Positions 10,787 to 62,017 are shown, numbered from the stretch's first letter. The stretch: DNA of 64,000 nucleotides from Ascidiella aspersa (GCA_963924565.1 OZ004609.1:5208001-5272000); one strand, 5' to 3'. Notes: generated from the letters alone by a model not told the origin. Numbers and translations are program-made.

Positions 10787-10816
10787 GTGGAGCAATTTAC
10801 CTTATTCAAATAGAAT
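10787..10816 (-). ncRNA. SL RNA 5' part (exon + 14 nt intron) fused to E2
   Basis: ATTCTATTTGAATAAG|GTAAATTGCTCCAC followed by element sequence. Confidence 0.85.
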
Positions 10817-11363
10817 ACTTTAAAATCGCGCGGCTAAGGCTTTATGCGAAGGCCAACTTTCAAAAACGCCAGTTTACTCAATATACGATTGTATGACTTC
10901 ACCACCTATATAAGGGTGTCGCCAGAGAGGCGCTGGTAAGTATTCACCATGCTATGTGGTCACGTGGTACTTCGCGTTGTTCGAAATTTCTTGTCGCGCC
11001 CCGTTCGTTTCAACCGCGACATTTTTAACAAAAAATTAACGCTCAAAAAGCCAACTCAACATTGATCCCAATGCATATCGCGCGCTGTGGCACTTCAAAG
11101 GGCGGCCTACACGCAAGAGAGAAGCGCCCTACGGTAAGTTGGAGGAAGCGTCACCTGCGAAAGCCACGGGGGTCGGGCAGACTTGCAAAGGAGAGAGAGG
11201 AGCTGATTTTGGTTATGGGAGAGTGGGCCAGGGCTATACATGCATTTTCGCCATCTCTTAATTTGACAAAGGACGCGATTACGCGATTTGGGGATTTTGC
11301 TACATGAATGCAATACAGTGGGGGTAGCTTGGCTAAGCGATTGATTGGTTCTAAAAAATATTC
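10787..11363 (-). repeat. SL RNA gene repeat unit (1 copy of the 584-bp unit, split by insertions at both ends)
   Basis: Near-identical to the units at 43024-45357; SL exon at 10801-10816. Confidence 0.95.
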
Positions 11364-12096
11364 TTTTTGGTTAAGAAAAATAGAAATGAAGTACAGCGAA
11401 CGAGATAAAAGTCCAACGAAAAGTGGAGAAAAGAGGATAAAACAAGTCGGTATTGCGCTAAACGATATGGCGAGAGGGTCGATAATTGAGATATTGGCGA
11501 TATAACTGCGATTAGGGAATATAGGCGAACATATGAGATTTAGTCGATAATGTATAAGTTTATATCAACTAGGTACAGACATACTTTAATGAATTCACGC
11601 TTACATTCGGACGTACTAGCATATGCGAGTGTGTATATATTTGCTGGTCTGATGGGCAAGTGTTTTGTTAGTGGGTATAGTGGTGGCATAATCCGGCTGT
11701 GAGGGTAGTATGTAGTTTAGCATTGTTGCTACGCTCGAGCATTGTATGCGCTTTGAGGAATCCAGTTGTAGGTTTATTGATATAACGGTGAAGGTAGGGT
11801 AGTGTGTAGTTGGGTTATGTTTTAGGTTATAACCCTTTAGACAATGGAGATTCTGCTGCGCTCAGACATGTATGTGCTTATAGTATTATCATTGCATTGC
11901 AGTTGTAATGTCGTGCTTTGGCAGTGAAGGCAGTGTGTAATTTAGTTATAATGTAGATCATAACCTTTAGGCATATGGGGAGGGTGTGGTGACTGAAGAC
12001 TATTTTGTCTTTGATATTAATGCTATATTGGGTTGATTCGTTATACGGAACATGGGATTTTACGAAATAGCACTATTTGAATAGTATTAATTTACT

Positions 12097-12169
12097 GGAC
12101 TGACCCGGGGTTCGAACCCGGGCCCTATAGGTTACACTACCGGCGCTCTAGCCATTGTGCCATTGAGTC
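12097..12169 (-). promoter_or_regulatory. tRNA-derived Pol III internal promoter (A box + B box), family B-type 3' UTR
   Basis: A box TGGCACAATGG, B box GGTTCGAACCC, intact T-arm CCGGG/CCCGG; anticodon stem broken; resembles tRNA-Thr(TGT). Confidence 0.75.
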
Positions 12170-12266
12170 GGTTGGTGATGTCTCCGTGTTTGGAGTTGTT
12201 ATTCTAGCGTTGTGTTGGTTAGTGCGACTCGTTTTTGCTTTTTGTGCATTTGGCTGCGTTGTTGAG

Positions 12267-15200
12267 TTAATCAAGGTTATCGTCTGTGTTTAGTTGTGTT
12301 TGTATGAGGTTTATTATGTTTTTGAATTTGACTTTGATTTTCCATGTTGTTTCATTTACAAAGTCCTGTGCATTGTGTAGATATTCATTTTCAGCTGTTA
12401 GTTTGTTTTTTTCATTTATTAGGATTTGTTTTGTTAATATTAGCAGTTTTTGCTTGCTGAGGCTTTTTTCAAATTCTGCTGGGTTTTGGTTATAAATGGT
12501 TGCGTGGTGGTCGGGGATGAAGGTGTGGCCGTATTCGTTTACTGTTATTTGATTGAGTTTTGTGTAGATTTTTTTGGTGATGTTGCATTCATTTAGGAGG
12601 TGGTAGATGTTGTCTTTTGGTCCGTGGCAGAAGTTGCATCGATTAATTCTTAGTTGTCCTGTCGAAGTTCGATTTATATTTCTTGAGTTGCGGAAATCGC
12701 CCCATTTATAGCTTTGGTGTGCTGTTAAGTAGGAGGTTTCGCGTTCATTATTATTGTATAGCTTTTTGTGTTTCCGTCCGTTCAGATGTATGTGTGTCCA
12801 GTTGATTGGGATTCGATCCATTTTTAATTCTGCCGAGATTGCTTTATTTTGCATAAGGATGTTGTAAATTGCCCTCATTTTATTATGTTTCCAATCGAAG
12901 TCACCGTGTTCCTGTTGAATTTTGTTGAATTGTTCTATGATAGATTTCCAGGTGGGATTTATTTTGTCTGCTTTTGGGTAGTGGTTGCCAAAAAGATGAG
13001 GGATTATGTTTTTTCCTTTTGTTCCAAGGGCGTGCATGTACCATATATGGTATGGTTGGGTTGGCGTGTCCGTCTTTTTTAGGTGTGAAATTTTTTTCGA
13101 GTTGGGCAGCAGCGATTTTAGTTTCCAGATCCGGCATTTTGATTCCACCTTCTTGTTTTGTGTTTAAAAGTTTTAGCCGTTTAATTGGTTCAATTTTTTT
13201 TGGGTGCCACAGGAATTCGTACAGTAGTTTGTTTATTTCTTTTATTATTTTTTTTGTCGGTATGATAATACGTGCGATATGGATTATTTGTGAGATCATT
13301 AGAGCATTTATAATGTGTATTTTCCCGTAAATTGTTTGGTTGAGTTTATTGAATTTGTGTTGTATGGCTTGAATTTTGTTTTTCGCTTTTATCCAGTTAA
13401 TATTTATTAGTGAGTATTGAGTGTTGTAATGTATGCCTAGAATTTTAACTTGTTCTTTAATGTGTTGTGGGTATAATTCTAAAAGTTGTGTTTTTATGAA
13501 GGGTGTAAAGGTAATAATTTGAGTTTTGTCCATGTTAAGTTTTTGTCCTGTTATATTTTGGTAGATTTTGAGTTCCTTGAAGAGTTCCAGCGCACTGTTT
13601 TTGTCCGAGATATAAAATGTGTTGTCGTCCGCAAATTGCTGTATGACGATTTTTGTTTTGAAAAGTTTAAATCCTGTTATTTTTTTGTTCCTTTTTATCA
13701 TTTTGTTTAAGATTTCTCCTATACAGGTGTATAGCAGCATACTAAGGGGACATCCTTGGCGGAGGCCTCTTTTTATGGTGATTTTTTCAGTTAGTTCGCC
13801 GTTAACTTCCAGTTGGCTGTTTATGTCAGTGTATAATATTTCGATCCATTTGATGAGATTTTGGTTGATTCCAAAGGATGTGAGGGTTTTTATTATTAGT
13901 GCGTGGTCTACTCGGTCAAAAGCTTTCTCGAAGTCTGTGAGTACGATTGCTAGTTCCTCCGTTTTTGCTTTTGCGTACTCTATGACTGAAGTGGTATTGT
14001 AGTGGATATGTTCGATACGTCTGTCTTCTATGCCGCATTTCTGATCTATGTTTATTTTATCTTTTAATTTCTTTTTTAGCTTGTTTGTGATGATTTTGCT
14101 GAGAATTTTGTATTCTGTCGTTAGTACCGAGATCGGGCGCCAGTTTTTGATGTCTTCGGGGGGTCCTTTTTTTGGTAGAAGCTTGGTTAATGCGGTTTTC
14201 ATGGTTTCGGTCATGTTTTCCTTTAGGTATATGTTAATAAAAACTTCGTGCAGATCTTCTTTAAGATCTTTCCAAAAATGTTGATAGAATTCGGACGTAA
14301 GTCCGTCGATTCCCGGTGTTATATTCTTGTTTAGTTCTTTCATGGCTTTGGTGAGCTCTTGTGGGGTTAAATATTTTTCTTCCGTTTTTTCTCTAGCAGG
14401 TGAGTTGTTGAATTGTAGTATTTTGTCTTGTCCTTCGATGTCCAGATTGTCCTTTTTTCCCCATAGGTTGTGATAAAATTTTTGTATTTCTTTTTTTTTA
14501 TAGTTTTCTGTTTTTATGAGTGTTCCATTTTCATCTTTTAGATTTCCTATTTTTTGTTTTTCTCCGTTTGTTCTTTCCAATTGATAAAAGTGCCTGTCCG
14601 GGGTTTCGCTGTCAGTAAGATTTTTTATTCTTGCTCGAATTTTTGCTCCGAAGGTCCGTTTTCTGTCTATTTCTTTTAATTTTTCGATAGTGGTGATGTA
14701 TTCTTCGTTGTGTGTCGTATCTCTGTTATTTATTCTTGCATTTATTATTTTTAGTTTATTTTTGAGTTGATTTTCTTCTATGTTTTCCGTTCGTTTCTTT
14801 TCTATACAATATGTTATGGTTTCTTTTTTAATTTTTTTTTTAGGTGGTCCCACCACGCCAGTAGGTGTGGGTGATTGTTTTTTTTTGTTTTTTCGTTGGC
14901 TATGGTTTGTTTTATTAAGTTTGTATACTTTTCGTCTTTTAATATGTCGTTGTTTATTTTCCAGTGGTTGCTTATTTTTTTTTGGTTTGTAGTTTTGCCG
15001 AGTGTGATGTAGGGTGCTTGGGTGTGATCCGATAGAGTGTGAGTGATATGTCCTGTTTTGAAAATTTTACTTGTATTGTTATCTCTGTTGTATATACGGT
15101 CGATTCTGGTTGCCATTGTTTGGGTTATTCGCGTGTAGGTTATTGAATTTGGGTAGCGTTGTCTGAATGTGTCCTGAAGGTTTAACTGTGCTTTTGTGTC

Positions 15201-15767
15201 GCGCCATTGTTTTCGGTCCTTTGTATTATATATATTGGTATTAGTTGTATCGATGTCGTTTTCTATGAAATTGAAGTCCCCCATTAGGATGAGGTCGTCG
15301 TAATGGTTTGCGTTTTGGTTTAGGTATTTTTCTATCTCATGGATTTGGTTGGTTCTTTGTTTTATTTGTGCGTTTGCTTGGCCAGATTTTAGGTAGATAT
15401 TCAGGAGTCTTGTTTTTTTATGGTTCTTGATTTCGTTTTTGTGTGTTAGTGTAATTTCTTGTATCCAGTTTTGTAGTATTATGTTTTGTTCGATGTCCCA
15501 GTTTGAATTGATTTCTTCCTTATATAATACGAGCGTGCCTTGCCAGAAATGTTTTACATTTTCGTTTGTGTTAATGTTTAGTACGTATTTAAGTTTTTCC
15601 TTTTCGGCCCAATTTTTAAGACTGTTTTCGTTTATTTTGTGGGTTTCTTGCATAAGGCAGATATCGATTTCGTTTTGTTTGATGAATGTTCCTAGTTGGT
15701 GTAGTTTGTTGTGTATTCCGTTAATGTTTAGTGTGCATATCTTTAATGTTGTGTTGGTGTGTGACAT
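12267..15767 (-). pseudogene. E3 ORF2 (APE endonuclease-RT) with two homopolymer frameshifts
   Basis: Three overlapping ORFs; T10 versus T11 near 14832-14841 and T7 versus T6 near 13091 relative to E4; could be sequencing errors. Confidence 0.85.
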
Positions 15768-15822
15768 AATGTTCAAGAAAGAGGGGGAAGACGCAAAGAT
15801 TTAAAAGTACGATTTATATATA

Positions 15823-17595
15823 TTAACCAATGGTGGCGTTTACTTGGACTATTATACCGGATGAGTTAACACTAATTTCGGGTGGTGTGTTCTGTATATT
15901 TCTTCGTTTGTTTTCTTCATCGTCGGTGGATAGTTGTCGTTTTCTTTCGTTTTCCAGGGGTGTTGAGTGCTGTATGGGGTTTGGGTTATTTGGTGTCGGT
16001 AATTCATCTTCTTTGGATTCTTCTTGGTTGGCTTCTTTTTTTGGCGGTTTTTTTCTTCTGTGTTTTGGTCTTTTTCTTGTTTTTTTTGGATGGTAGTTTT
16101 CGTCATCAGAAGGTTCCGTGTTGGTTGTATTGAAGTTTGGATAAAGATTGAGGAAGACAGACGAGTAGTCGTCGCTAGAAAGAGGGGGTGAGGAAGAGGA
16201 GGAGGAGGAGTGGGAGAGGGAGGAGGAGGGAGGGTTGTAGTCGTTGTCATGGTCGTCTGGTAACGATGCGATGGTTGAGGGAACGGAGTCAGGTGGGTCG
16301 GATAGGTTTGGCGGTCCTAGGTAGGGTGATTCGATTTTTTCAGTTGGAGGTGTATTTTGTACGGGGATATTTGGGGTGGATGGTTTGATGTTTTGGTCTG
16401 GTTGGTTTCTTGCTTCTTCGTTGGTATGGTTAGATCCTGGGCTTATTGGCTTGTTATTTAGGTGGTCTGCGGAAGTTGACGGGATGTTTTCTTGTATGTC
16501 TTGGGGTGCCGGTAGATTGGTTCGTTGCGGGTTTTCGTTTATGTTTTCTGTGTCCATTTTTTCATTTCCGTTTTCGTTATCAGGGATTAGATTTTCTGCT
16601 ATCTCGATAATTTCATCTTTCTTGTGTAGCTCTTTTTCTTTGCTGTGGGAATGATTTGTTGCGTTGGATTCGTTGCTTTGGTTTAAGGTGTGATTCGGGG
16701 TTGCCATGAATCCTTGGTTGAAGATTTCCTGTTTTCTTAGTCTTTCTTCTAACTGTTTGATTACGGCTTCCAAGGAGGCCGTATTTTTTGGGTCGAAACG
16801 GTTTGCTGGTGTTGACGTTCTGAAACCTTGCAATTTTGGGAATTCTCTGTCAAAGATTTGGTCGTGTGTCTCGCTGGGTGGTTTGTTATGGAGGAGATCG
16901 CGGTCAAATTCTGGTGTTATAATTGGTTCGTTGGGGCAGTCTTTCATCAGGTGTCCTGTTTTAAAACAGAGGCGGCATGTTTGGGGGTTGGGACATTGGC
17001 TAGCCCAATGTCCCCTCTCGTTGCAATTTCTGCATACCGGTCCGAATGATTGGCCTGGTTTCACGATTTGTATCCTGTTTTTCTTGTAGAATATTTCCGG
17101 CTGGATGTTTTCAAGTTTAGGATCTACTAAGAATAGATTAACGTAGCCATTCATCTTATCTTGTCTTGATTTGTGTGTGCAAAATTGAGTACCTTTAGGT
17201 TTTCCCCATTGTAATTCAGACGCTATTTTAAAGATATGATCTTGTGTCCATTCAAACGGGATCGGGAATAGGGTAATTTTGGTTTGGGGGAGGGTGGGTT
17301 CGAAAGATTTCAATTCTATTATTTGTCTATCTGATGTTCGAATTTCTTTACCGTTTTCTAGTTCTTTGTGAAGTCTATCTCGGTTATATTGAAGGCGTGG
17401 ATTTTCCTTATTAAATGTTATTTGGTAGGTTTGGTTCTTTCTGTTGAGTGTCCTTGCTCCTGTGATATTTTCATCATATTTTTTCAGTGCTTGTTCCTCA
17501 TCGAACAATGATAGGAAGTTTATTATCGTAAAGTTCGATGTGTTACGAACTTGAATGTTTAGTGAACGTGTAGCAGTATATTCTAATATATTCAT
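15823..17595 (-). CDS. E3 ORF1 (family A), gag-like nucleic-acid-binding protein with two CCHC knuckles, 590 aa
   Basis: CRNCNERGHWASQC and CRLCFKTGHLMKDC; first ATG at 17595 matches the 590-aa E8 ORF1. Confidence 0.9.
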   Translation of the reverse strand: MNILEYTATRSLNIQVRNTSNFTIINFLSLFDEEQALKKYDENITGARTLNRKNQTYQITFNKENPRLQYNRDRLHKELENGKEIRTSDRQIIELKSFEPTLPQTKITLFPIPFEWTQDHIFKIASELQWGKPKGTQFCTHKSRQDKMNGYVNLFLVDPKLENIQPEIFYKKNRIQIVKPGQSFGPVCRNCNERGHWASQCPNPQTCRLCFKTGHLMKDCPNEPIITPEFDRDLLHNKPPSETHDQIFDREFPKLQGFRTSTPANRFDPKNTASLEAVIKQLEERLRKQEIFNQGFMATPNHTLNQSNESNATNHSHSKEKELHKKDEIIEIAENLIPDNENGNEKMDTENINENPQRTNLPAPQDIQENIPSTSADHLNNKPISPGSNHTNEEARNQPDQNIKPSTPNIPVQNTPPTEKIESPYLGPPNLSDPPDSVPSTIASLPDDHDNDYNPPSSSLSHSSSSSSSPPLSSDDYSSVFLNLYPNFNTTNTEPSDDENYHPKKTRKRPKHRRKKPPKKEANQEESKEDELPTPNNPNPIQHSTPLENERKRQLSTDDEENKRRNIQNTPPEISVNSSGIIVQVNATIG

Positions 17596-17686
17596 ACTTA
17601 TTTGTAGGGGAAAGGCGCAAAGGGAAGAAAGATACGGAGGGAAAGTGCGATACAAGAAAGGGTACAACAAACAATGTGGTGAGTGT

Positions 17687-17721
<35 letters not shown>

Positions 17722-18669
17722 TATTATTAAGTATTTTTATTATTTACCGTTAGACGGCGCTAGAGAGCAGTGGATTTTTTTGGGGTTCGGCACAAACTGT
17801 TTATTTTTTTATTAACCGCTAGACGGCGTGGTGTGTGTTTTTTTGATTTGTCGGTAGATGGCGCTAGTGTGGCAAATATTTGATCAGGGCTTCGCCTCAA
17901 ACGCTTAAAGGGTGGGGCGAAAAAACGACAGAGTACGAATACGATGACAGGCGGTAACAAGACAGTTAAGCTCCGCTGCAAGTTTTGGGATGTCAGGAAA
18001 AAAACAAACAAAAAGTACGAGCCAATTAGTGACGTCACTTCCGACGTCGAGGGATGAAAAATTTACAAGTATTAGAAAAGGTAGTACCACTAAGGGGCAG
18101 TAGAGATCTCGAAAATTTGCCGGGAGCTTCGCTGTATTTTTAAATACGAGTAGGCGGAAAAAGTTCTAAGTCCGTCAAGAGAGTCTCTGAGACTTCTCTC
18201 GGCGTACTTAGAAGCGCAAAAAACCACAAACACGACAAAAAATTAATAACGAGGCGAAAGAGGAGGCACCACTGATTGGCGCACTACTAGAACGTAGTTT
18301 ACCCAAGTTGAAACACTTGGCGAGAAAGATTACAAAGGCGCAAAAAATCTACAATACGATCAATAACAAACACACAATTAAAGTTTGATAGCGGTCTTTT
18401 GCTTAGAGCAAAGAGTTGGTTTTAGCACGATTAAGTACCACAAATAGTAGAAAAGTAACAACAGGTCCCTACAAAAGCCTGCCTGCCGCCCCTGCAACTG
18501 TTTGTTACAGCGGCTGCTGACTAATGCCTTCTAGTAAGGCCTGACACGAAAAGCGCAACAAAAAACCTCTAATAGGTTGAAATTACAAAAGAGTACGTCA
18601 CAAGGGTATATCCAAAAGGTTGAAAGGCTCGCAGTTGCGGGTGATTCTACGCAAATAAGATAAAGTCCG

Positions 18670-19247
18670 GGTGGAGCAACTTACCTTATTCAAATAGAAT
18701 ACTTTAAAATCGCGCGGCTAAGGCTTTATGCGAAGGCCAACTTTCAAAAACGCCAGTTTACTCAATATACGATTGTATGACTTCACCACCTATATAAGGG
18801 TGTCGCCAGAGAGGCGCTGGTAAGTATTCACCATGCTATGTGGTCACGTGGTACTTCGCGTTGTTCGAAATTTCTTGTCGCGCCCCGTTCGTTTCAACCG
18901 CGACATTTTGAACAAAAAATTAACGCTCAAAAAGCCAACTCAACATTGATCCCAATGCATATCGCGCGCTGTGGCACTTCAAAGGGCGGCCTACACGCAA
19001 GAGAGAAGCGCCCTACGGTAAGTTGGAGGAAGCGTCACCTGCGAAAGCCACGGGGGTCGGGCAGACTTGCAAAGGAGAGAGAGGAGCTGATTTTGGTTAT
19101 GGGAGAGTGGGCCAGGGCTATACATGCATTTTCGCCATCTCTTAATTTGACAAAGGACGCGATTACGCGATTTGGGGATTTTGCTACATGAATGCAATAC
19201 AGTGGGGGTAGCTTGGCTAAGCGATTGATTGGTTCTAAAAAATATTC
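18670..19247 (-). repeat. SL RNA gene repeat unit (1 copy); SL exon 18685-18700 fused to E3
   Basis: 584-bp unit sequence; donor GTAAGT retained here. Confidence 0.95.
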
Positions 19248-20006
19248 TTTTTTTTATATTATTTATTGGTTAAGAAAAATAGAAATGAAGTACAGCGAAC
19301 GAGATAAAAGTCCAACGAAAAGTGGAGAAAAGAGGATAAAACAAGTCGGTATTGCGCTAAACGATATGGCGAGAGGGTCGATAATTGAGATATTGGCGAT
19401 ATAACTGCGATTAGGGAATATAGGCGAACATATGAGATTTAAGTCGATAATGTATAAGTTTATATCAATTAGGTACAGACATACTTTAATGAATTCGCGC
19501 TTACATTCGGACGTACTAAGCATATGCATGTGCGAGTGTGTATATATCTACACTGGTATATTTGCTGGTCTGATGGGTAAGTGTTTTGTTAGTGGGTATA
19601 GTGGTGGCATAATCCGGCTGTGAGGGTAGTATGTAGTTTTAGCATTGTTGCTACGCTCGAGCATTGTATGCGCTTTGAGGGATCCAGTTGTAGGTTTATT
19701 GATATAACGGTGAAGGTAGTGTGTAGTTTGGTTATGTTTTAGGTCATAACCCTTTAGACAATGGAGATTCTGCTATGTTCAAACATGTATGTGCTTATAG
19801 TATTATCATTGCATTGCAGTTGTAATGTCGTGCTTTGGCAGTGAAGGCAGTGTGTAATTTGGTTATAATGTAGATAATAACCTTTCGGCATATGGGGAGG
19901 GTGTGGTGACTGATGACTATTTTGTCTTTGATATTAATGCTATATTGGGTTGATACGGAACATGGGATTTTACGAAATAGCACTATTTGAATAGTATTAA
20001 TTTACT

Positions 20007-20079
20007 GGACTGACCCGGGGTTCGAACCCGGGCCCTATAGGTCATACTACCGGCGCTCTAGCCATTGGGCCATTGAGTC
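20007..20079 (-). promoter_or_regulatory. tRNA-derived Pol III promoter in E4 3' UTR
   Basis: A box TGGCCCAATGG; B box GGTTCGAACCC. Confidence 0.75.
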
Positions 20080-20176
20080 GGTTGGTGATGTCTCCGTGTT
20101 TGGAGTTGTTATTCTAGCGTTGTGTTGGTTAGTGCGACTCGTTTTTGCTTTTTGTGCATTTGGCTGCGTTGTTGAG

Positions 20177-23662: not shown

Positions 23663-23710
23663 ATTGAAAGAGAGTAAGGGGAAGGCGTAAGTTTGAAATA
23701 ATATAACGAT

Positions 23711-31334: not shown

Positions 31335-31389
31335 AATGTTCAAGAAAGGGGGGGAAGACGCAAAGATTTAAAAGTACGATTTATATATA

Positions 31390-53064: not shown

Positions 53065-53641
53065 GTGGAGCAAATTACCTTATTCAAATAGAATACTTTA
53101 AAATCGCGCGGCTAAGGCTTTATGCGAAGGCCAACTTTCAAAAACGCCAGTTTACTCAATATACGATTGTATGACTTCACCACCTATATAAGGGTGTCGC
53201 CAGAGAGGCGCTGGTAAGTATTCACCATGCTATGTGGTCACGTGGTACTTCGCGTTGTTCGAAATTTCTTGTCGCGCCCCGTTCGTTTCAACCGCGACAT
53301 TTTTAACAAAAAATTAACGCTCAAAAAGCCAACTCAACATTGATCCCAATGCATATCGCGCGCTGTGGCACTTCAAAGGGCGGCCTACACGCAAGAGAGA
53401 AGCGCCCTACGGTAAGTTGGAGGAAGCGTCACCTGCGAAAGCCACGGGGGTCGGGCAGACTTGCAAAGGAGAGAGAGAAGCTGATTTTGGTTATGGGAGA
53501 GTGGGCCAGGGCTATACATGCATTTTCGCCATCTCTTAATTTGACAAAGGACGCGATTACGCGATTTGGGGATTTTGCTACATGAATGCAATACAGTGGG
53601 GGTAGCTTGGATAAGCGATTGATTGGTTCTAAAAAATATTC
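53065..53641 (-). repeat. SL RNA gene repeat unit (1 copy); SL exon 53079-53094 fused to E7
   Basis: 584-bp unit sequence; donor GTAATT. Confidence 0.95.
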
Positions 53642-54311
53642 TTTTTTTTTTTTTTTTTTTTTTTTATCTTTTTTATTGGTAAGAAAAGAAATGAAAATAC
53701 AGCGAAACAGGTTAAAAGTCCAACGTAAAGTGGAGAAACGAAAAGTAATAAAATGGCATTGCGCTAAACGACGATGGGACAGGGCGATACGATCATAGAT
53801 ACAGGCGAGAAATTGCGATTTTAGTAGGTAAGCGATAAGTTAACTAATTGAGCGATATTCCATGGTTATACAATGACTAGAACATGAACATATAAGATTT
53901 TCAATCGTTACGGTTGCGATACATAAGTGAATGTGAAGGTGTGTGTAGGCAGGTTTACTGCTCGAAAGGATGTGGATGGGATTGCGAATACATTTACAGT
54001 TGTAAAGGTAGTGTGTAGGTAGCGTTATTGCTACGCACGAGCACACACACACACACACGCGGAAGTGGGGACAGTTGTATTATTTTTTATGCGGGTTGCA
54101 TGGGAGTGAAGGTAGTATGTATATTGCGATGCTGCGCTCGAGCATACGCGGAAATACGAGAAGGGATATTGTTAATTTGCATTTTGATAATGCAGTCAGA
54201 GTGGTTCTGCTTAGGCCTTATTCATGGAGTATTGCAATTTGGGATAAGGCAATTTTTGTTTACTGTTGTTGCGAGATATGAGACTAATTTATTATTAACG
54301 GAGAATTTTGA

Positions 54312-54383
54312 GGTAGCTCAGGGGTTCGAACCCGTGCCCTTAGGATTGCAGAGCTGGCGCTTTAACCATTAAGCCAATCGGTC
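54312..54383 (-). promoter_or_regulatory. tRNA-derived Pol III promoter in E8 3' UTR
   Basis: A box TGGCTTAATGG; B box GGTTCGAACCC. Confidence 0.72.
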
Positions 54384-54481
54384 GGTTAGTCCGTGGTCAG
54401 TATTTTGCAATGTTATTTGTGCGAGGTAGTTGAGTGTGTTTCCTTATTGCTTATTATGCTTAGGGCTGTGATTTGATGTTA

Positions 54482-57400
54482 TTACTCGGGGTTGTTTTCT
54501 ATGTTCGTTTGTGTTTGGATGTCATTTAATATGGTTTTAAATTTTACTTTTATTTTCCAAGTTGTTTCGTTTACAAATTCTTGTGGGTTATGCAGGTATT
54601 CGTTTTCTGTTGTAAGTTTGTTTTTTTCGGTTATTAGTATATGCTTTGTGAGAACCAGTAATTTTTGTTTGCTCAGACTGTGTTGAAATTCTGTTGGGTT
54701 TTGATTGTATAGGATGGCGTAGTGGTCTGGGGTAAAGGTGAATCCGTGTTCATGGGTTGCTATTTGATTAAGGTTTGTATATATTTTTTTTGTTATGTTG
54801 CATTGGCTTAGCAGGTGTTTTATATTGTCGTTGGGCCCGTGGCAGTAGTTGCATCTGTTTATTCGAATTTTTCCTGTTGATGTCCTGATTATGTTACGTG
54901 ATTTTCGGAAGTCGCCCCATTTGTATGCTTGGTGAGCCGTGAGGTAAGATGTTTGCCGTTCTGTATTATTAAATATTTTTTTTTGTTTCGGTTTGATTAA
55001 GTGTATATTTTCCCAGTTTATTGTTTTGTTTTCCATTTTTATTTCAGTATGTATTGCTTTTTTTTGGATAAGGATGTCGTAGATGGCTCGCATTTTGTTA
55101 TTTATCCAGTCGAAGTCGTTATGTGTTTCGTATATTGTATTGTAGTGTTTGATAATGAGTTGCCATTGTGGGTTAACTTGCTGCTGTTTAGGGTAGTGAT
55201 TGCCGAATAAGTGCGGGATGATGTGTTTTGCTTTAGTGCCCATTTGGTACATATACCAACTTTGAAAGGGTTGTGTGGGCTCGATGGTGTTTTTCATTTG
55301 TGATATTTTTTCCAGTTGAGCCGCAACAATTTTAGTTTCGAGGTCTGGCATTTGAATCCCACCGTTTCGTTTCGTGTTTATGAGTTTACGTCGCTTAATA
55401 GGTTCAATTTTTTTAGGGTGCCACAGGAATTCGTACAGTAATTTGTTTATTTCTTTTATTATTTTTTTTGTCGGTATGATAATACGTGCGATATGGATTA
55501 TTTGTGAGATCATTAGAGCATTTATAATGTGTATTTTCCCGTAAATTGTTTGGTTGAGTTTATTGAATTTGTGTTGTATGGCTTGTATTTTGTTTTTCGC
55601 TTTTATCCAGTTAATATTTATTAGTGAGTATTGCGTGTTGTAGTATATGCCTAGAATTTTAACTTGTTCTTTAATGTGTTGTGGGTATAGTTCTGAAAGT
55701 TGCGTTTTTATGAAGGGTGTAAAGGTAATAATTTGAGTTTTGTCCATGTTTAGTTTTTGTCCTGTTATATTTTGGTAGTTTTTGAGTTCCTTGAAGAGTT
55801 CCAGCGCACTGTTTTTGTCCGAGATATAGAATGTGTTGTCATCCGCAAATTGTTGTATAAAGATTTTTGTTTTGAATAGTTTAAAGCCTGTTATTTTTTT
55901 GTTCCTTTTTATCATTTTGTTTAAGATTTCTCCTATACAGGTGTATAGCAGCATACTAAGGGGACATCCTTGACGGAGGCCTCTTTTTATTGTGATTTTT
56001 TCAGTTAGCTCGCCGTTCACTTCCAGTTGGCTATTAATGTCTGTATATAAGATTTCTATCCATTTGATGAGGTTTTGATTGATTCCAAAAGATGTGAGGA
56101 TTTTTATGATTAGTTCGTGGTCTACTCGGTCAAAGGCTTTCTCAAAGTCTGTAAGTACGATTGCCAGTTCTTCTGATTTTGTTTTTGCGTACTCTATGGC
56201 TGAGGTGGTATTGTAATGGATATGTTCGATACGTCTGTCTTCTATGCCGCATTTCTGATCTATGTTTATTTTATCCTTTAATTTCTTTTTTAGCTTGTTT
56301 GTAATGATTTTGCTGAGAATTTTGTATTCCGTTGTTAAAACCGAAATCGGGCGCCAATTTTTAATTTCGTTTAGAGGTCCTTTTTTTGGTAGTAATTTGG
56401 TTATTGCAGTTTTCATCGTTTGCGTTAGATTTCCTTGTAGTTGTATATTAATGAAAAGCTCATGTAGATCTTCCTTTAGTTGTTGCCAAAAGTGTTGATA
56501 AAATTCCGAAGTCAGTCCATCGATTCCCGGGGTCGTGTTTTTGTTTAAATCTTTCATTGCTTTTGTTAGGTCGGTTAGTGGAAAAAATTTATCTTCTATT
56601 TTTTCTGTATTTGAGGTTTGTTCTGTTTTGAGTATTTTGTTTTGTCCGTTTATGTCTAGGTTGTCTTTTTTTCCCCATAAGTTGTAGTAGAAGTTGTGTA
56701 TTTCTGTTTTGATTTCCGCGTTGGTTTGTATTAAATTTCCTTTCTCGTCCTTGATTTTATCTATTTTTTGTTTTTCGCCGTTTTGTTTTTCTATTTGATA
56801 AAAGTGTCTGTCTGGTGTTTCATTTTCTGCTAGGTTTTTGATTCTGGAACGTATTTTCGCTCCCGCTGTGCGTTTTCTTTCCATTTCTTTCAGTTTTTCT
56901 ATAATTGATATGTATTGTTCGTTATGGGTTGTGTTTCTGCTATTCATTTTTGCATGTATTGATTTTAGTTTGTTTCTGAGTTCATTTTCTTCGATGTTTT
57001 CTGTGCGTTTTTTTTCGATGCAGTAAGTTATGGTTTCTTTTTTGATTTTCTTTTTGAGGTGTTCCCACCACGCTAGTAGGTGTGGGTGTTCGTCTTTTTT
57101 TGTTTTTTCGTGTTCTATGGTTTGTTTTATTGCGTTTGTGTATTTTTCGTCTTTCAAGATATCATTGTTTAGTTTCCAGTGTCCGTTTATAATTTTTTTT
57201 TTGTTAATTTTACCAATTGTTATGAATGGTGCTTGAGTGTGATCTGATAGTACATGTGGGATGTGTCCTGTTTGGTAGATTTTATTTGTGTTGTTGTCTT
57301 TGTTGTATATTCTGTCTATTCGTGTTGCTATTGTTGGGGTTACGCGTGTGTAGACTTTAGTATTGGGGTAGCGTTGCCTGTAGGTATCTTGTAAGCTAAG

Positions 57401-57982
57401 TTGTGTTTTTGCTTGTCGCCATTGTTTTCGGTCTTGTGTGTTGTGTGTATTTGTGTTTGTAGAGTCGCTATCGTGTTCTGTGAAGTTGAAGTCCCCCATT
57501 AGAATGAGGTCGTCGTAATAGTTTGCGTTTTGGTTTAGATATTTTTCTATCTCATGGATTTGGTTGGTTCTTTGTTTTATTTGTGCATTTGCTTGGCCAG
57601 ATTTTAGGTAGATATTCAGGAGTCTTGTTTTTTTATGGTTCTTGATTTCGTTTTTGTGTGTAAGTGTAATTTCTTGTATCCAGTTTTGTAGTATTATGTT
57701 TTGTTCGATGTCCCAGTTTGAATTGATTTCTTCCTTATATAATACGAGCGTGCCTTGCCAGAAATGTTTTACATTTTCGTTTGTGTTAATGTTTAGTATG
57801 TATTTAAGTTTTTCCTTTTCGGCCCAATTTTTAAGACTGTTTTCGTTTATTTTGTGGGTTTCTTGTATAAGGCAGATATCGATTTCGTTTTGTTTCATGA
57901 ATGTTCCTATTTGGTGTAGTTTCTTGTGTATTCCGTTAATGTTTAGTGTGCATATCTTTAATGTTGTGTTGGTGTGTGACAT
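54482..57982 (-). CDS. E8 ORF2: APE endonuclease-RT
   Basis: Complete motifs; ATG at 57982. Confidence 0.97.
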   Translation of the reverse strand: MSHTNTTLKICTLNINGIHKKLHQIGTFMKQNEIDICLIQETHKINENSLKNWAEKEKLKYILNINTNENVKHFWQGTLVLYKEEINSNWDIEQNIILQNWIQEITLTHKNEIKNHKKTRLLNIYLKSGQANAQIKQRTNQIHEIEKYLNQNANYYDDLILMGDFNFTEHDSDSTNTNTHNTQDRKQWRQAKTQLSLQDTYRQRYPNTKVYTRVTPTIATRIDRIYNKDNNTNKIYQTGHIPHVLSDHTQAPFITIGKINKKKIINGHWKLNNDILKDEKYTNAIKQTIEHEKTKKDEHPHLLAWWEHLKKKIKKETITYCIEKKRTENIEENELRNKLKSIHAKMNSRNTTHNEQYISIIEKLKEMERKRTAGAKIRSRIKNLAENETPDRHFYQIEKQNGEKQKIDKIKDEKGNLIQTNAEIKTEIHNFYYNLWGKKDNLDINGQNKILKTEQTSNTEKIEDKFFPLTDLTKAMKDLNKNTTPGIDGLTSEFYQHFWQQLKEDLHELFINIQLQGNLTQTMKTAITKLLPKKGPLNEIKNWRPISVLTTEYKILSKIITNKLKKKLKDKINIDQKCGIEDRRIEHIHYNTTSAIEYAKTKSEELAIVLTDFEKAFDRVDHELIIKILTSFGINQNLIKWIEILYTDINSQLEVNGELTEKITIKRGLRQGCPLSMLLYTCIGEILNKMIKRNKKITGFKLFKTKIFIQQFADDNTFYISDKNSALELFKELKNYQNITGQKLNMDKTQIITFTPFIKTQLSELYPQHIKEQVKILGIYYNTQYSLININWIKAKNKIQAIQHKFNKLNQTIYGKIHIINALMISQIIHIARIIIPTKKIIKEINKLLYEFLWHPKKIEPIKRRKLINTKRNGGIQMPDLETKIVAAQLEKISQMKNTIEPTQPFQSWYMYQMGTKAKHIIPHLFGNHYPKQQQVNPQWQLIIKHYNTIYETHNDFDWINNKMRAIYDILIQKKAIHTEIKMENKTINWENIHLIKPKQKKIFNNTERQTSYLTAHQAYKWGDFRKSRNIIRTSTGKIRINRCNYCHGPNDNIKHLLSQCNITKKIYTNLNQIATHEHGFTFTPDHYAILYNQNPTEFQHSLSKQKLLVLTKHILITEKNKLTTENEYLHNPQEFVNETTWKIKVKFKTILNDIQTQTNIENNPE

Positions 57983-58037
57983 GGTGTTCAAGAAAGAGGG
58001 GGAAGACGCAAAGGTTTAAAAATACGATTTATATATA

Positions 58038-59810
58038 TTAACCAATGGTGGCGTTTACTTGGACTATTATACCGGATGAGTTAACACTAATTTCGGGTGG
58101 TGTGTTCTGTATATTTCTTCGTTTGTTTTCTTCATCGTCGGTGGATAGTTGTCGTTTTCTTTCGTTTTCCAGGGGTGTTGAGTGCTGTATGGGGTTTGGG
58201 TTATTTGGTGTCGGTAATTCATCTTCTTTGGATTCTTCTTGGTTGGCTTCTTTTTTTGGCGGTTTTTTTCTTCTGTGTTTTGGTCTTTTTCTTGTTTTTT
58301 TTGGATGGTAGTTTTCGTCATCAGAAGGTTCCGTGTTGGTTGTATTGAAGTTTGGATAAAGATTGAGGAAGACAGACGAGTAGTCGTCGCTAGAAAGAGG
58401 GGGTGAGGAAGAGGAGGAGGAGGAGTGGGAGAGGGAGGAGGAGGGAGGGTTGTAGTCGTTGTCATGGTCGTCTGGTAACGATGCGATGGTTGAGGGAACG
58501 GAGTCAGGTGGGTCGGATAGGTTTGGCGGTCCTAGGTAGGGTGATTCGATTTTTTCAGTTGGAGGTGTATTTTGTACGGGGATATTTGGGGTGGATGGTT
58601 TGCTGTTTTGGTCTGGTTGGTTTCTTGCTTCTTCGTTGGTATGGTTAGATCCTGGGCTTATTGGCTTGTTATTTAGGTGGTCTGCGGAAGTTGACGGGAT
58701 GTTTTCTTGTATGTCTTGGGGTGCCGGTAGATTGGTTCGTTGCGGGTTTTCGTTTATGTTTTCTGTGTCCATTTTTTCATTTCCGTTTTCGTTATCAGGG
58801 ATTAGATTTTCTGCTATCTCGATAATTTCATCTTTCTTGTGTAGTTCTTTTTCTTTGCTGTGGGAATGATTTGTTGCGTTGGATTCGTTGCTTTGGTTTA
58901 AGGTGTGATTCGGGGTTGCCATGAATCCTTGGTTGAAGATTTCCTGTTTTCTTAGTCTTTCTTCTAACTGTTTGATTACGGCTTCCAAGGAGGCCGTATT
59001 TTTTGGGTCGAAACGGTTTGCTGGTGTTGACGTTCTGAAACCTTGCAATTTTGGGAATTCTCTGTCAAAGATTTGATCGTGTGTCTCGCTGGGTGGTTTG
59101 TTATGGAGGAGATCGCGGTCAAATTCTGGTGTTATAATTGGTTCGTTGGGGCAGTCTTTCATCAGGTGTCCTGTTTTAAAACAGAGGCGGCATGTTTGGG
59201 GGTTGGGACATTGGCTAGCCCAATGTCCCCTCTCGTTGCAATTTCTGCATACCGGTCCGAATGATTGGCCTGGTTTCACGATTTGTATCCTGTTTTTCTT
59301 GTAGAATATTTCCGGCTGGATGTTGTCAAGCTTAGGATCTACTAAGAATAGATTGACGTAGCCATTCATCTTATCTTGTCTTGATTTGTGCGTGCAAAAT
59401 TGAGTGCCTTTAGGTTTTCCCCATTGTAATTCAGACGCTATTTTAAAGATATGGTCTTGTGTCCATTCAAACGGGATCGGGAATAGGGTAATTTTGGTTT
59501 GGGGGAGGGTGGGTTCGAAAGATTTCAATTCTATTATTTGTCTATCTGATGTTCGGATTTCTTTACCGTTTTCTAGTTCTTTGTGAAGTCTATCTCGGTT
59601 ATATTGAAGGCGTGGATTTTCCTTATTAAATGTTATTTGGTAGGTTTGGTTCTTTCTGTTGAGTGTCCTTGCTCCTGTGATATTTTCATCATATTTTTTC
59701 AGTGCTTGTTCCTCATCGAACAATGATAGGAAGTTTATTATCGTAAAGTTCGATGTGTTACGAACTTGAATGTTTAGTGAACGTGTAGCATTATATTCTA
59801 ATATATTCAT
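58038..59810 (-). CDS. E8 ORF1 (family A), 590 aa
   Basis: Two CCHC knuckles. Confidence 0.93.
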   Translation of the reverse strand: MNILEYNATRSLNIQVRNTSNFTIINFLSLFDEEQALKKYDENITGARTLNRKNQTYQITFNKENPRLQYNRDRLHKELENGKEIRTSDRQIIELKSFEPTLPQTKITLFPIPFEWTQDHIFKIASELQWGKPKGTQFCTHKSRQDKMNGYVNLFLVDPKLDNIQPEIFYKKNRIQIVKPGQSFGPVCRNCNERGHWASQCPNPQTCRLCFKTGHLMKDCPNEPIITPEFDRDLLHNKPPSETHDQIFDREFPKLQGFRTSTPANRFDPKNTASLEAVIKQLEERLRKQEIFNQGFMATPNHTLNQSNESNATNHSHSKEKELHKKDEIIEIAENLIPDNENGNEKMDTENINENPQRTNLPAPQDIQENIPSTSADHLNNKPISPGSNHTNEEARNQPDQNSKPSTPNIPVQNTPPTEKIESPYLGPPNLSDPPDSVPSTIASLPDDHDNDYNPPSSSLSHSSSSSSSPPLSSDDYSSVFLNLYPNFNTTNTEPSDDENYHPKKTRKRPKHRRKKPPKKEANQEESKEDELPTPNNPNPIQHSTPLENERKRQLSTDDEENKRRNIQNTPPEISVNSSGIIVQVNATIG

Positions 59811-60850
59811 ACTTGTTTGTAGGGGAAAGGCGCAAAGGGAAGAAAGATACGGAGGGAATAGTGCGATACAAGAAAGGATACAACAAACAATGTGGTGAGT
59901 GTGTTTTTATTTTTTTTATTATTTACCGCTAGACGGCGCTAGAGAGCAGTGGATTTTTTTTGGGGTTCGCCACAAACTGTTTATTTTTTATTAACCGCTA
60001 GACGGCGTGGTGTGTGTTTTTTTGATTTGTCGGTAGATGGCGCTAGAGTGGCAAAAATTTGATCAGGGCTTCGCCTCAAACGCTTAAAAGGGTGGGGCGA
60101 AAAAACGACAGAGTACGAATACGATGACAGGCGGTAACAAGACAGTTAAGCTCCGCTGCAAGTTTTGGGATGTCAGGAAAAAAACAAACAAAAAGTACGA
60201 GCCAAATAGTGACGTCACTTCCGACGTCGAGGAATGAAAAATTTACAAGTATTAGAAACAGTAGTACCACTAAGGGGCAGTAGAGATCTCGAAAATTTGC
60301 CGGGAGCTTCGCTGTATTTTTAAATACGAGTAGGCGGAAAAAGTTCTAAGTCCGTCAAGAGAGTCTCTGAGACTTCTCTCGGCGTACTTAGAAGCGCAAA
60401 AAGCCACAAACACGACAAAAAATTAATAACGAGGCGAAAGAGGAGGCACCACTAATTGGCGCACTACTAGAACGTAGTTTACCCAAGTTGAAACACTTGG
60501 CGAGAAAGATTACAAAGGCGCAAAAAATCTACAATACGGTCAATAACAAACACACGATTAAAGTTAGATAGCGGTCTTTTGCTTAGAGCAAAGAGTCGGT
60601 TTTAGCACGATTAAGTACCACAAATAGTAGAAAAGTAACAACAGGTCCCTACAAAAGCCTGCCTGCCGCCCCTGCAACTGTTTGTTACAGCGGCTGCTGA
60701 CTAATGCCTTCTAGTAAGGCCTGACACACGAAGAGCGCAACAAAAACCTCTAATAGGTTGAAATTACAAAAGAGTACGTCACAAAGGTATATCCAAAAGG
60801 TTGAAAGGCTCGCAGTTGCGGGTGATTCTACGCAAATAAGATAAAGTCCG

Positions 60851-62017
60851 GGTGGAACAAGTTACCTTATTCAAATAGAATACTTTAAAATCGCGCGGCT
60901 AAGGCTTTATGCGAAGGCCAACTTTCAAAAACGCCAGTTTACTCAATATACGATTGTATGACTTCACCACCTATATAAGGGTGTCGCCAGAGAGGCGCTG
61001 GTAAGTATTCACCATGCTATGTGGTCACGTGGTACTTCGCGTTGTTCGAAATTTCTTGTCGCGCCCCGTTCGTTTCAACCGCGACATTTTTAACAAAAAA
61101 TTAACGCTCAAAAAGCCAACTCAACATTGATCCCAATGCATATCGCGCGCTGTGCCACTTCAAAGGGCGGCCTACACGCAAGAGAGAAGCGCCCTACGGT
61201 AAGTTGGAGGAAGCGTCACCTGCGAAAGCCACGGGGGTCGGGCAGACTTGCAAAGGAGAGAGAGGAGCTGATTTTGGTTATGGGAGAGTGGGCCAGGGCT
61301 ATACATGCATTTTCGCCATCTCTTAATTTGACAAAGGACGCGATTACGCGATTTGGGGATTTTGCTACATGAATGCAATACAGTGGGGGTAGCTTGGCTA
61401 AGCGATTGATTGGTTCTAAAAAATATTCCACCGTGGTGGAGCAACTTACCTTATTCAAATAGAATACTTTAAAATCGCGCGGCTAAGGCTTTATGCGAAG
61501 GCCAACTTTCAAAAACGCCAGTTTACTCAATATACGATTGTATGACTTCACCACCTATATAAGGGTGTCGCCAGAGAGGCGCTGGTAAGTATTCACCATG
61601 CTATGTGGTCACGTGGTACTTCGCGTTGTTCGAAATTTCTTGTCGCGCCCCGTTCGTTTCAACCGCGACATTTTTAACAAAAAATTAACGCTCAAAAAGC
61701 CAACTCAACATTGATCCCAATGCATATCGCGCGCTGTGCCACTTCAAAGGGCGGCCTACACGCAAGAGAGAAGCGCCCTACGGTAAGTTGGAGGAAGCGT
61801 CACCTGCGAAAGCCACGGGGGTCGGGCAGACTTGCAAAGGAGAGAGAGGAGCTGATTTTGGTTATGGGAGAGTGGGCCAGGGCTATACATGCATTTTCGC
61901 CATCTCTTAATTTGACAAAGGACGCGATTACGCGATTTGGGGATTTTGCTACATGAATGCAATACAGTGGGGGTAGCTTGGCTAAGCGATTGATTGGTTC
62001 TAAAAAATATTCCACCG
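60851..62017 (-). repeat. SL RNA gene tandem repeat, 2 x 584 bp
   Basis: SL exons at 60866-60881 (fused to E8) and 61450-61465 (intact). Confidence 0.95.
61416..61465 (-). ncRNA. Intact spliced-leader RNA gene
   Basis: Identical to 34769-34818. Confidence 0.9.

What the first reader, a model, noticed from the sequence alone, without database searches (positions are those of the whole stretch)
10796..60861. SL splice-donor +5G is changed in three different ways, only in element-fused copies
Seen: all 5 intact SL genes have GTAAGT. Fused copies read GTAAAT (10796, 43033), GTAACT (26433, 34214, 60861) and GTAATT (53074). Only E3 (18680) keeps G. The variant tracks the element 5' UTR type. Known: +5G is a key U1/U6-pairing position of 5' splice sites. 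Inference: (1) the elements carry their own SL-derived 5' sequence and overwrite the target on integration, as R2 does with co-transcribed 28S sequence, with E3 resolving downstream of +5; (2) the donor is selected to be weak so that full-length RNA survives.
Basis: partly seen in the sequence, partly recalled or inferred. Interest (0 to 1): 0.85.

Follow-up and report, generated by a model that had tools for sequence, protein, structure and literature searches.

The report
Retrotransposon leaders carry altered SL donor
In this sea-squirt-type genome, LINE-like retrotransposons that live inside the spliced-leader RNA gene array start their RNA at the first base of the leader. They carry their own copy of its first 30 bases, in which the +5 base of the splice donor is changed according to element lineage; whether that change is adaptive or just tolerated could not be settled.

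Summary
All 12 SL copies in the window read as described. Genome-wide, 0 of 320 uninserted SL genes have a non-G at +5, against 19 of 20 family A/B element-fused copies (A x7, C x9, T x3).

Interpretation 1 (the element carries its own SL-derived 5' sequence) is strongly supported.
- Insertions outside the array on C2 and C1 have target-site duplications and poly(A) tails. Each begins exactly at SL nucleotide 1 and keeps its own lineage's +5 base.
- In the array, all 18 insertions are full length and in register. They show a small target deletion instead of a duplication, which fits homology-guided 5' joining.
- E3 is a recombinant (G21 and C25 restored together) and is one of only two decayed copies.

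Interpretation 2 (the donor is selected to be weak) remains open, at about 0.45.
- +5 sits in an unpaired bulge or loop of a conserved leader hairpin that buries the SL exon and GUAA. All other leader variation is also at unpaired positions.
- A third lineage (family E, 5 copies outside the array) transposed with GTAAGT intact; there +5G is base-paired.

This is a new variant of a known kind. The same scan noted the elements themselves on this window.

The parts
60852..60881 (-). SL-derived leader (SL nt 1-30) of a family B1 element; +5 = C at 60861, C25T at 60857
53642..60881 (-). Family B1 element including leader (7240 nt). ORF1 (CCHC) and ORF2 (APE+RT) are both open; poly(A) 24; 3' junction at SL-unit nt 38
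53065..53094 (-). Leader of a family A' element; +5 = T at 53074
45359..53094 (-). Family A' element (7737 nt), both ORFs open; 3' junction at SL-unit nt 32/33
43024..43053 (-). Leader of a family A element; +5 = A at 43033
42987..43053 (-). A-type leader hairpin (67 nt, -19.2 kcal/mol, z -3.6). SL nt 1-5, 7-13 and G16-A19 pair with an element-encoded arm; nt 20-21 (+4, +5) form a 2-nt bulge
35372..43053 (-). Family A element (7683 nt), both ORFs open. Its body is 0% divergent from the A' copy beyond about nt 1000
34205..34234 (-). Leader of a B1 element; +5 = C at 34214
27001..34234 (-). Family B1 element (7234 nt), both ORFs open
26424..26453 (-). Leader of a B2 element; +5 = C at 26433
19248..26453 (-). 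Family B2 element (7206 nt), both ORFs open
18671..18700 (-). Leader of E3: B1-type UTR, but +5 = G (18680) and nt 25 = C, both in the SL state
11364..18700 (-). E3 element (7337 nt). ORF2 is broken into three stop-free pieces; 3.3% from C3:5304561, which has +5C
10787..10816 (-). Leader of a family A element; +5 = A at 10796
1..10816 (-). Decayed family A copy with about 3.5 kb of extra DNA (11168 nt in all). It runs off the window to C3:5207649; ORFs are fragmented
60824..60881 (-). B-type leader hairpin (58 nt, -16.7 kcal/mol, z -4.4). SL nt 1-7 and 9-20 pair with the arm; nt 21-23 (+5 to +7) form an internal loop; T25 pairs with A35
43054..44805 (-). Three uninserted 584-bp SL units (SL nt 1 at 44805, 44221, 43637), all GTAAGT. 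The native donor is predicted unpaired
60882..61465 (-). Uninserted SL unit (GTAAGT) that also supplies the promoter region for the fused leader at 60881
34235..34818 (-). Uninserted SL unit (GTAAGT)
62019..64000 (-). 3' part of a further A-type element (its leader lies at C3:5277834, with +5T)

Best explanation
The +5 substitutions are heritable marks of the retrotransposons' own leader, not mutations of the host gene.

What the elements are (shown): two related families (A and B, ORF2 37% identical) plus a third lineage (E) of L1/Tx1-like LINEs. They have a CCHC ORF1, an APE endonuclease plus RT in ORF2, and a poly(A) tail. They insert in the SL orientation into the SL intron, with the bottom-strand nick after SL-unit nt 31/32 (family A) or nt 37 (family B).

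How the leader is inherited (RNA start shown for B and E, inferred for A):
- The RNA starts at SL nt 1, presumably from the SL gene promoter.
- It therefore carries the 16-nt SL exon plus the first 14-15 intron bases as its own 5' leader.
- After target-primed reverse transcription, the cDNA end that is complementary to this leader pairs with the identical 30 nt of the target just upstream of the nick (inferred).
- The junction is resolved in register. This deletes 1-6 target bases instead of making a target-site duplication, and usually leaves the element's version of nt 21-30 in place.
- E3 is the rare case where the host version was kept through nt 25, or was restored later by gene conversion.

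The leader hairpin (predicted, supported by the pattern of variation): an element-encoded arm pairs with the SL exon and with GUAA of the donor. +5 lies in a bulge (family A) or internal loop (family B).

Why +5 is not G: of the readings I weighed, the one I rate highest (about 0.45) is that G is kept out of this exposed position because a perfect AAG|GUAAGU near the cap would recruit U1 or the spliceosome to an RNA that must stay full length. In that view the hairpin is the main protection and +5 a second one. Family E keeps G, but pairs it in an apical stem.

My odds: about 0.85 that the leader is element-borne and installed by homology; about 0.45 that non-G is adaptive. The single confidence figure given (0.55) is for the whole statement.
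For: - Census: 0 of 320 uninserted copies versus 19 of 20 A/B-fused copies have a non-G at +5.
- RNA-borne leader, C2 locus: flank, 14-bp target-site duplication, B1 element (leader with +5C and T25, poly(A) 45), the same 14 bp, short family E element (GTAAGT leader, poly(A)), the same 14 bp, flank.
- RNA-borne leader, other loci: the C1 family E copy has a 13-bp duplication and starts at SL nt 1. The C7 copy starts at SL nt 1 in unrelated DNA.
- Array junctions: 18 insertions with matching 5' and 3' junction counts. All are full length, none has a duplication, and each has a small target deletion.
- E3: positions 21 and 25 are switched together. Its closest relative has C/T, and E3 is one of only 2 of 19 copies with broken ORFs.
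- Hairpin: z -3.1 to -4.4, against -0.6 for the native SL RNA. Arm-shuffle controls reached the observed energy in 0-3 of 1000 trials. Across the three A-type leaders, 0 of 48 paired columns vary against 10 of 21 unpaired (p 1e-6); for element-encoded columns only, 0 of 24 against 8 of 13 (p 3e-5).
- Special status of +5: modules about 25% divergent in the first 500 nt share 29 of 30 SL-derived bases. No other donor position is ever changed. G at +5 would add about 4 kcal/mol to the A and A' hairpins yet is absent.
- Inference: a one-way re-supply of G from targets (as in E3) should fix G unless copies carrying G propagate poorly.
Against:
- +5 behaves like any other unpaired leader position, where 8 of 13 arm positions vary. 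A/T variation within family A may therefore be drift.
- Counting lineages, G is kept in 1 of about 5 (family E), close to the neutral 25%.
- Five family E copies, two with target-site duplications, transposed with GTAAGT intact.
- GTAAAT, GTAACT and GTAATT keep 8 of 9 positions complementary to U1, so they are probably still usable donors (general knowledge; not computed for this species).
- The fused RNA lacks the nearby Sm-like site, so it is unlikely to act as an SL donor in trans.
- Copies in the array also exchange blocks at the DNA level (0% versus 20-45% mosaics). Part of the spread of each +5 state may therefore be recombination or duplication rather than new integration.
- E3's G may be post-insertion gene conversion in a dead copy.
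- Family A has no ectopic copy, so its RNA-borne leader is inferred.
Confidence: 0.55

Rival explanations
1. Neutral drift. The leader is element-borne, but +5 is simply the first SL-derived position that is neither base-paired in the leader hairpin nor otherwise constrained. Having once lost G, it wanders among A, C and T, and each state hitch-hikes with its 5' UTR module. No selection on donor strength is involved.
For: - All variable positions in the A-type leaders are unpaired, +5 included.
- Family E keeps G where it is paired.
- About 1 in 5 lineages has G, as expected by chance.
- The +5 variants remain near-consensus donors.
- The Sm-like site is separated from the leader by the 7-kb element.
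Against: - The other unpaired SL-derived positions (nt 6, 8, 14, 15, 20, 22, 23, 30) never vary in A/B leaders.
- At least 3 of about 5 substitution events in the 28 shared SL-derived positions hit +5. My rough binomial gives about 4e-4 for a prespecified site and about 0.01 for any site.
- G would stabilise the A-type hairpin but is absent.
- Recurrent re-supply of G from targets (E3-type events) should erase neutral variants.
Confidence: 0.38
2. Regulated use of the donor rather than silencing. The leader donor is cis-spliced to an internal acceptor, giving an mRNA that looks SL-trans-spliced and is used for translation. The unspliced RNA is the transposition template. The +5 base and the hairpin set the ratio, as suboptimal splice sites do in retroviruses.
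For: - The donor core (AAG|GTAA, +6T) is strictly kept in all 25 fused leaders.
- Pyrimidine-rich tracts follow the A-type leaders, and A' has an acceptor-like site near nt 120.
- An earlier first-reader note reports a conserved acceptor upstream of ORF2. I did not test it.
Against: - The acceptor-like sites found by a crude scan are not conserved between 5' modules.
- Conservation of nt 1-20 is equally explained by hairpin pairing and by homology to the target.
- There are no RNA data.
Confidence: 0.1
3. DNA-level history only. The variants arose as point mutations in a few fused genes and spread inside the array by unequal crossing-over and gene conversion. The RNA does not carry the leader.
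For: - Two pairs of copies are exact duplicates, and there is regular 8242-bp spacing.
- Copies are sharp-edged mosaics.
Against: - Ectopic copies on other chromosomes, with target-site duplications, carry the leader from SL nt 1 together with lineage-specific +5 and nt 25 bases.
- Poly(A) lengths differ between array copies, from 2 to 24.
Confidence: 0.05
4. Assembly or polishing artefact in a repetitive array.
For: Tandem arrays are error-prone in assemblies.
Against: - The same base recurs in every copy of a given 5' module, on two strands of the array and on three other chromosomes.
- It is linked to a second change (C25T).
Confidence: 0.02

Closest known systems
SLACS / CZAR / CRE1-2 (CRE clade) of trypanosomatids
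   Same: They are site-specific for tandem SL RNA genes and inserted in the SL orientation. From my memory of Patrick et al. 2008 (not checked here), SLACS RNA starts at +1 of the interrupted SL gene from the SL promoter. PMC4640811 lists spliced-leader exons as a known LINE target.
   Different: Those elements have a restriction-like endonuclease and insert inside the SL exon (nt 11/12), so no splice donor is carried. Here the endonuclease is APE-type and the site is in the intron at +15 or +21. The whole exon plus the donor becomes the element's 5' end, which creates the donor problem discussed here.
NeSL-1 of nematodes
   Same: It is an SL1-gene-specific non-LTR element.
   Different: It belongs to the RLE-type NeSL/Utopia lineage and targets the exon. 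No donor-bearing leader has been described for it.
R2 (28S rDNA) with upstream 28S sequence on its RNA
   Same: The element is co-transcribed with the host gene. Host sequence at the RNA 5' end is thought to guide uniform 5' junctions (my memory of Eickbush et al. 2013; not checked here).
   Different: R2 is freed from the co-transcript by a self-cleaving ribozyme and has an RLE endonuclease. Here the 5' end is the host gene's own start and no ribozyme family was found. The carried host segment holds a functional signal (a splice donor) that differs from the host at one position.
Site-specific L1/Tx1-group LINEs (Tx1, Keno on U2 snRNA genes, Mutsu on 5S rDNA)
   Same: They have an APE+RT ORF2 and a CCHC ORF1, end in poly(A), and target multicopy small-RNA genes. 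The ORF2 here is most like L1 ORF2p among solved structures (4e-72), and relatives in the protein database often carry zf-RVT.
   Different: I found no SL RNA gene target for this group in the papers searched. The clade was not placed by phylogeny here.
Retroviral major splice donor control (suboptimal sites, donor in a stem-loop)
   Same: A full-length RNA that must escape splicing carries a donor near its 5' end, buried in a hairpin (general knowledge).
   Different: Here the donor is inherited from a host SL gene and splicing has not been shown.

Membership tests
L1/Tx1-group APE-type non-LTR retrotransposon | ORF2 with an N-terminal APE endonuclease followed by a reverse transcriptase | tested here: met
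   Pfam Exo_endo_phos plus RVT_1 in both families. Human L1 ORF2p is the best solved relative, 4e-72 over residues 5-890.
L1/Tx1-group APE-type non-LTR retrotransposon | Poly(A) 3' end and target-site duplication at insertion | tested here: met
   Every copy has poly(A), 2-45 nt. Ectopic sites have 12-14 bp duplications. In the SL array a small deletion replaces the duplication.
L1/Tx1-group APE-type non-LTR retrotransposon | Placement in the clade by RT phylogeny with reference elements | not tested
   No reference set was at hand. The only indirect hints are zf-RVT in database relatives and a CCHC-like motif at the ORF2 C-terminus.
SL-gene-specific retrotransposons of the CRE or NeSL type | Restriction-like endonuclease C-terminal to the RT | tested here: not met
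   An APE domain sits at the N-terminus and no RLE was detected.
SL-gene-specific retrotransposons of the CRE or NeSL type | Insertion within the SL exon | tested here: not met
   The 5' junction lies after SL-unit nt 30/31 and the 3' junction at nt 32/33 or 38, both in the intron.
Host-promoter co-transcribed, homology-joined element (works like R2 or SLACS) | The element RNA 5' end coincides with the host gene start and carries host sequence | tested here: met
   Shown for lineages B and E by ectopic copies with target-site duplications that start at SL nt 1. Inferred for family A. Not confirmed at the RNA level.
Host-promoter co-transcribed, homology-joined element (works like R2 or SLACS) | Uniform, in-register 5' junctions at the specific target | tested here: met
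   All 18 array insertions are full length and in register, with none 5'-truncated.
Host-promoter co-transcribed, homology-joined element (works like R2 or SLACS) | Self-cleaving ribozyme that frees the 5' end (R2) | tested here: not met
   No Rfam family matched in the window. A ribozyme is not needed if the RNA starts at the SL transcription start.
Weakened splice donor under selection | Lower use of the variant donor than of GTAAGT in vivo | not testable with these tools

The most novel reading that the evidence does not exclude
A chordate LINE lineage has captured the SL gene's promoter, exon and splice donor as its own leader. It controls that donor in two ways, a hairpin and the +5 base, so that the same transcript can either stay unspliced as the transposition template or be cis-spliced into an mRNA indistinguishable from an SL-trans-spliced host message. 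That would be retrovirus-like splicing control and molecular mimicry of trans-splicing by a non-LTR element.
Probability: 0.1. Interest if true: 0.85.

Novelty: new variant of a known kind. Interest (0 to 1): 0.6.

Why it matters
SL-gene-specific retrotransposons are known from trypanosomatids and nematodes, but those cut the SL exon with a restriction-like nuclease. Here an APE-type, L1-like lineage in a chordate relative sits in the SL intron, so its RNA inherits a complete SL exon and a consensus donor.

That gives a natural experiment on how a mobile element handles a strong host splice signal at its 5' end. It also gives sequence markers (+5 and nt 25) that show which strand's information survives 5' junction formation in target-primed reverse transcription, a step that is still poorly understood.

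If non-G at +5 proves to be selected, it would be a clear case of a LINE editing a captured host signal. If it does not, the markers still document homology-guided 5' joining.

Tried and rejected
I could not check whether the nearest database relative (31% identical) also has an SL leader in another species.
- The 'variant SL gene' next to the C2 insertion turned out not to be an uninserted SL gene. It is the leader of a short family E element.
- I first read the C2 junction as homology-mediated, with a 32-bp duplication. I rejected this: three copies of the same 14-bp target show two ordinary insertions at one site.
- Is +5 chosen for hairpin stability? No. G would be as good (B, E) or better (A, A') (single-base swaps were used for folding only).
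- A crude scan for acceptor-like sites downstream of the leader gave a few sites that are not conserved between modules. This is inconclusive.
- C7 copy: no target-site duplication or poly(A) was found, and its ORFs are only 63-72% like family B. I use it only as a weak example.
- C5 orphan SL+GTAAAT: no similarity to any element. Its nature is unknown.
- Rfam gave nothing.
- Two further G-bearing SL copies differ from the native context only at nt 33-38 and were not inspected.

Full report
**What is in the window**

The 16-nt motif is the Ciona-type spliced leader (the exact string occurs in Ciona SL papers). It occurs 12 times, always on the minus strand. The SL unit is 584 bp.
- Five copies are uninserted and read GTAAGT followed by the native intron.
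- Seven are followed, after SL-unit nt 30/31, by elements of 7.2-7.7 kb that end in poly(A). The rest of the SL unit then resumes.

**The elements**

All lie in the SL orientation. Each has an ORF1 with CCHC knuckles and an ORF2 with an N-terminal APE endonuclease and a reverse transcriptase.
- Among solved structures, ORF2 is most like human L1 ORF2p (4e-72).
- The nearest proteins in the large database are only 31-36% identical, and many carry zf-RVT.
- Families A and B share 37% ORF2 identity.
- Family A resumes the SL unit at nt 32/33 and family B at nt 38. There is no target-site duplication, only a loss of 1-6 target bases.

**Genome-wide census**

The window is C3:5208001-5272000 of a 308.6-Mb assembly.
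- 342 copies match SL+GTAANTTG.
- 320 have G with the exact native context.
- None has a non-G with the native context.
- 19 are non-G: A x7, C x9, T x3. Each sits on a family A or B 5' UTR.
- No A-type leader has G, and E3 is the only B-type leader with G.
- Allowing 3 mismatches over the 30-mer gives 345 hits. No fused copy therefore has changes in GTAA, in +6 or in the SL exon.

**The variant is a marker of the 5' module**

An alignment of the first 260 nt gives five leader types:

| Type | +5 base | Copies |
|---|---|---|
| A | A | 6 |
| A'' | A | 2 |
| A' | T | 3 |
| B1 and B2 | C, always with C25T | 9 |
| E3 (B1 UTR) | G, with C25 | 1 |

The bodies are mosaics. In 500-nt bins, pairs of copies are either 0-2% or 20-45% divergent, with sharp boundaries. 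For example, the A' copy at 53094 and the A copy at 43053 differ only in the first ~700 nt. So +5 travels with the 5' UTR module, not with the whole element.

Two pairs of copies are exact duplicates. Seventeen of 19 copies have both ORFs open. The exceptions are the 11.2-kb copy at 10816 and E3.

**Proof that the leader is carried by the RNA**

- On C2, a B1 copy with a 45-nt poly(A) and a short family E element lie head to tail. Three copies of the same 14-bp target separate them from each other and from the flanks, which means two ordinary insertions at one site. Each begins exactly at SL nt 1. The B1 copy has +5C and T25, and the E copy has GTAAGTTT.
- On C1, a second E copy (1668 nt) has a 13-bp duplication and starts at SL nt 1 after two extra bases.
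- On C7, a copy with a B2-like UTR starts at SL nt 1 in unrelated DNA, but I found no duplication there.
- On C4, a 42-nt retro-copy of the SL RNA itself, with poly(A) and a 12-bp duplication, shows the same machinery acting on the native RNA.
- The ectopic targets share G^(G/A)AAT with the array site of family B.

The full-length RNA of lineages B and E therefore starts at the SL transcription start and carries the lineage's own nt 21-30. For family A this is inferred.

**How the array junctions form (inferred)**

At ectopic sites the two nicks are 12-14 bp apart and give a duplication. In the array, all 18 insertions are full length and in register, with a deletion and no duplication.

That is what one expects if the cDNA end complementary to leader nt 1-30 pairs with the identical target segment just upstream of the nick, and the overhang is trimmed. 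The element's nt 21 and nt 25 usually survive.

E3 has both back in the host state while its closest relative (3.3% divergent) has C/T. This means either a crossover between nt 25 and nt 30 at integration, or later gene conversion of a decaying copy. I cannot tell which.

**Leader structure**

Earlier first-reader notes on this window proposed an anti-SL arm, and I tested that.
- The first 58-68 nt of every lineage fold so that the SL exon and GUAA pair with an element-encoded arm: A -19.2 kcal/mol (z -3.6), A' z -3.1, B1 -16.7 (z -4.4), E3 z -3.7.
- The native SL RNA region gives z -0.6, with the donor unpaired.
- Shuffling only the arm reached the observed energy in 0-3 of 1000 trials.
- Across the three A-type leaders, all 10 variable columns are unpaired and none of the 48 paired columns varies (p 1e-6). 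Within element-encoded columns the split is 0 of 24 against 8 of 13 (p 3e-5).
- +5 lies in a 2-nt bulge (family A) or a 3-nt internal loop (family B).
- T25 of family B pairs with A35.
- In family E, +5G is paired in a small apical stem, with C32 or U32 opposite it in different copies.

**Is non-G selected?**

In favour:
- Modules about 25% divergent over the first 500 nt share 29 of the 30 SL-derived bases.
- On a lineage tree, at least 3 of about 5 substitution events in the 28 shared positions hit +5 (my rough binomial: about 4e-4 for a prespecified site, about 0.01 for any site).
- Other unpaired SL-derived positions never vary.
- G would stabilise the A and A' hairpins by about 4 kcal/mol but is absent.
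- The only array copy with G is decayed.
- One-way re-supply of G from targets should fix G unless such copies fail to propagate (inference).

Against:
- +5 behaves like any unpaired leader position.
- Counting lineages, G is kept in about 1 of 5.
- Five family E copies keep GTAAGT, two of them with clean duplications.
- The variants still match U1 at 8 of 9 positions (general knowledge).
- The fused RNA has lost the adjacent Sm-like site, so it should not act as an SL donor in trans.
- Block exchange at the DNA level spreads modules without new integration.

I put the adaptive reading at about 0.45, neutral drift at about 0.38, and regulated cis-splicing at about 0.1.

**Comparison with known systems**

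Papers found here list SL exons as targets of the CRE clade and of NeSL elements, both with restriction-like endonucleases. I found no report of SL-gene-specific LINEs in tunicates. That search covers open-access papers only; Repbase reports were not searchable.

The system works like SLACS (host promoter, from memory) and like R2 (host sequence on the RNA guiding 5' joining, from memory). It is a member of neither: it has APE instead of RLE, an intron instead of an exon site, and no ribozyme.

**Limits**

- The clade was not placed by phylogeny.
- The species was not identified.

Noticed in passing
G000:C4:1836733-1836800 (L048, about 1534-1600): A retro-pseudogene of the SL RNA itself: SL nt 1-42 followed by an A-rich tail, flanked by a 12-bp duplication (GAATAGGTTGTC). 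It sits at a G^GAAT site like the family B target, so the LINE machinery also copies the native SL RNA.
   Followed up: partly
G000:C2:36741200-36748600 (L031 plus L001): Two successive insertions (a B1 element, then or before it a short family E element) into the same 14-bp target, leaving three copies of that 14-mer. This shows a reproducible 14-bp stagger and a short endonuclease motif.
   Followed up: yes
window 11364-60881 and C3:5269500-5440000 (L034-L044): Element copies are mosaics of sharply bounded blocks that are either 0-2% or 20-45% divergent (5' UTR, ORF1, parts of ORF2, 3' UTR), yet 17 of 19 keep both ORFs open. This suggests several deep lineages that recombine freely, by template switching or array gene conversion.
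   Followed up: partly
G000:C1:1767157-1768824 (L046); also C8:18730668, C9:16621255, C9:25657292 (L049-L051): Family E: short (1.4-1.7 kb) elements with an SL leader, an ORF1-like frame only and a B-like 3' end. They are found only outside the SL array and are probably non-autonomous, mobilised in trans. Older copies have mutated SL exons but still read GTAAGT.
   Followed up: partly
G000:C5:26522778-26522801 (L047): An orphan SL exon followed by GTAAATTTTCTCGC, with no similarity to any of the elements and no duplication or poly(A) found. Its nature is unknown; it could be a relic or a variant SL-like gene.
   Followed up: partly
G000:C3, about 5.396-5.408 Mb: The SL array changes orientation. 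Copies are on the minus strand up to about 5,395,444 and on the plus strand from 5,407,926. Further array pieces lie on unplaced contigs such as C21.
   Followed up: no
window 1-10816: The first family A copy is 11.2 kb instead of 7.7 kb and has fragmented ORFs. It carries about 3.5 kb of extra DNA that I did not identify.
   Followed up: no
window 42900-42980 and 52950-53020 (minus strand): Long T-rich or pyrimidine tracts, variable in length between copies, directly follow the A-type leader hairpin. In A' they end in an acceptor-like CAG near element nt 120.
   Followed up: partly
window 35372-35420, 53642-53690 (minus strand): Both families have an AATAAA-like signal 10-20 nt before the poly(A). 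This suggests ordinary cleavage and polyadenylation of a transcript that starts at an SL (snRNA-like) promoter.
   Followed up: no
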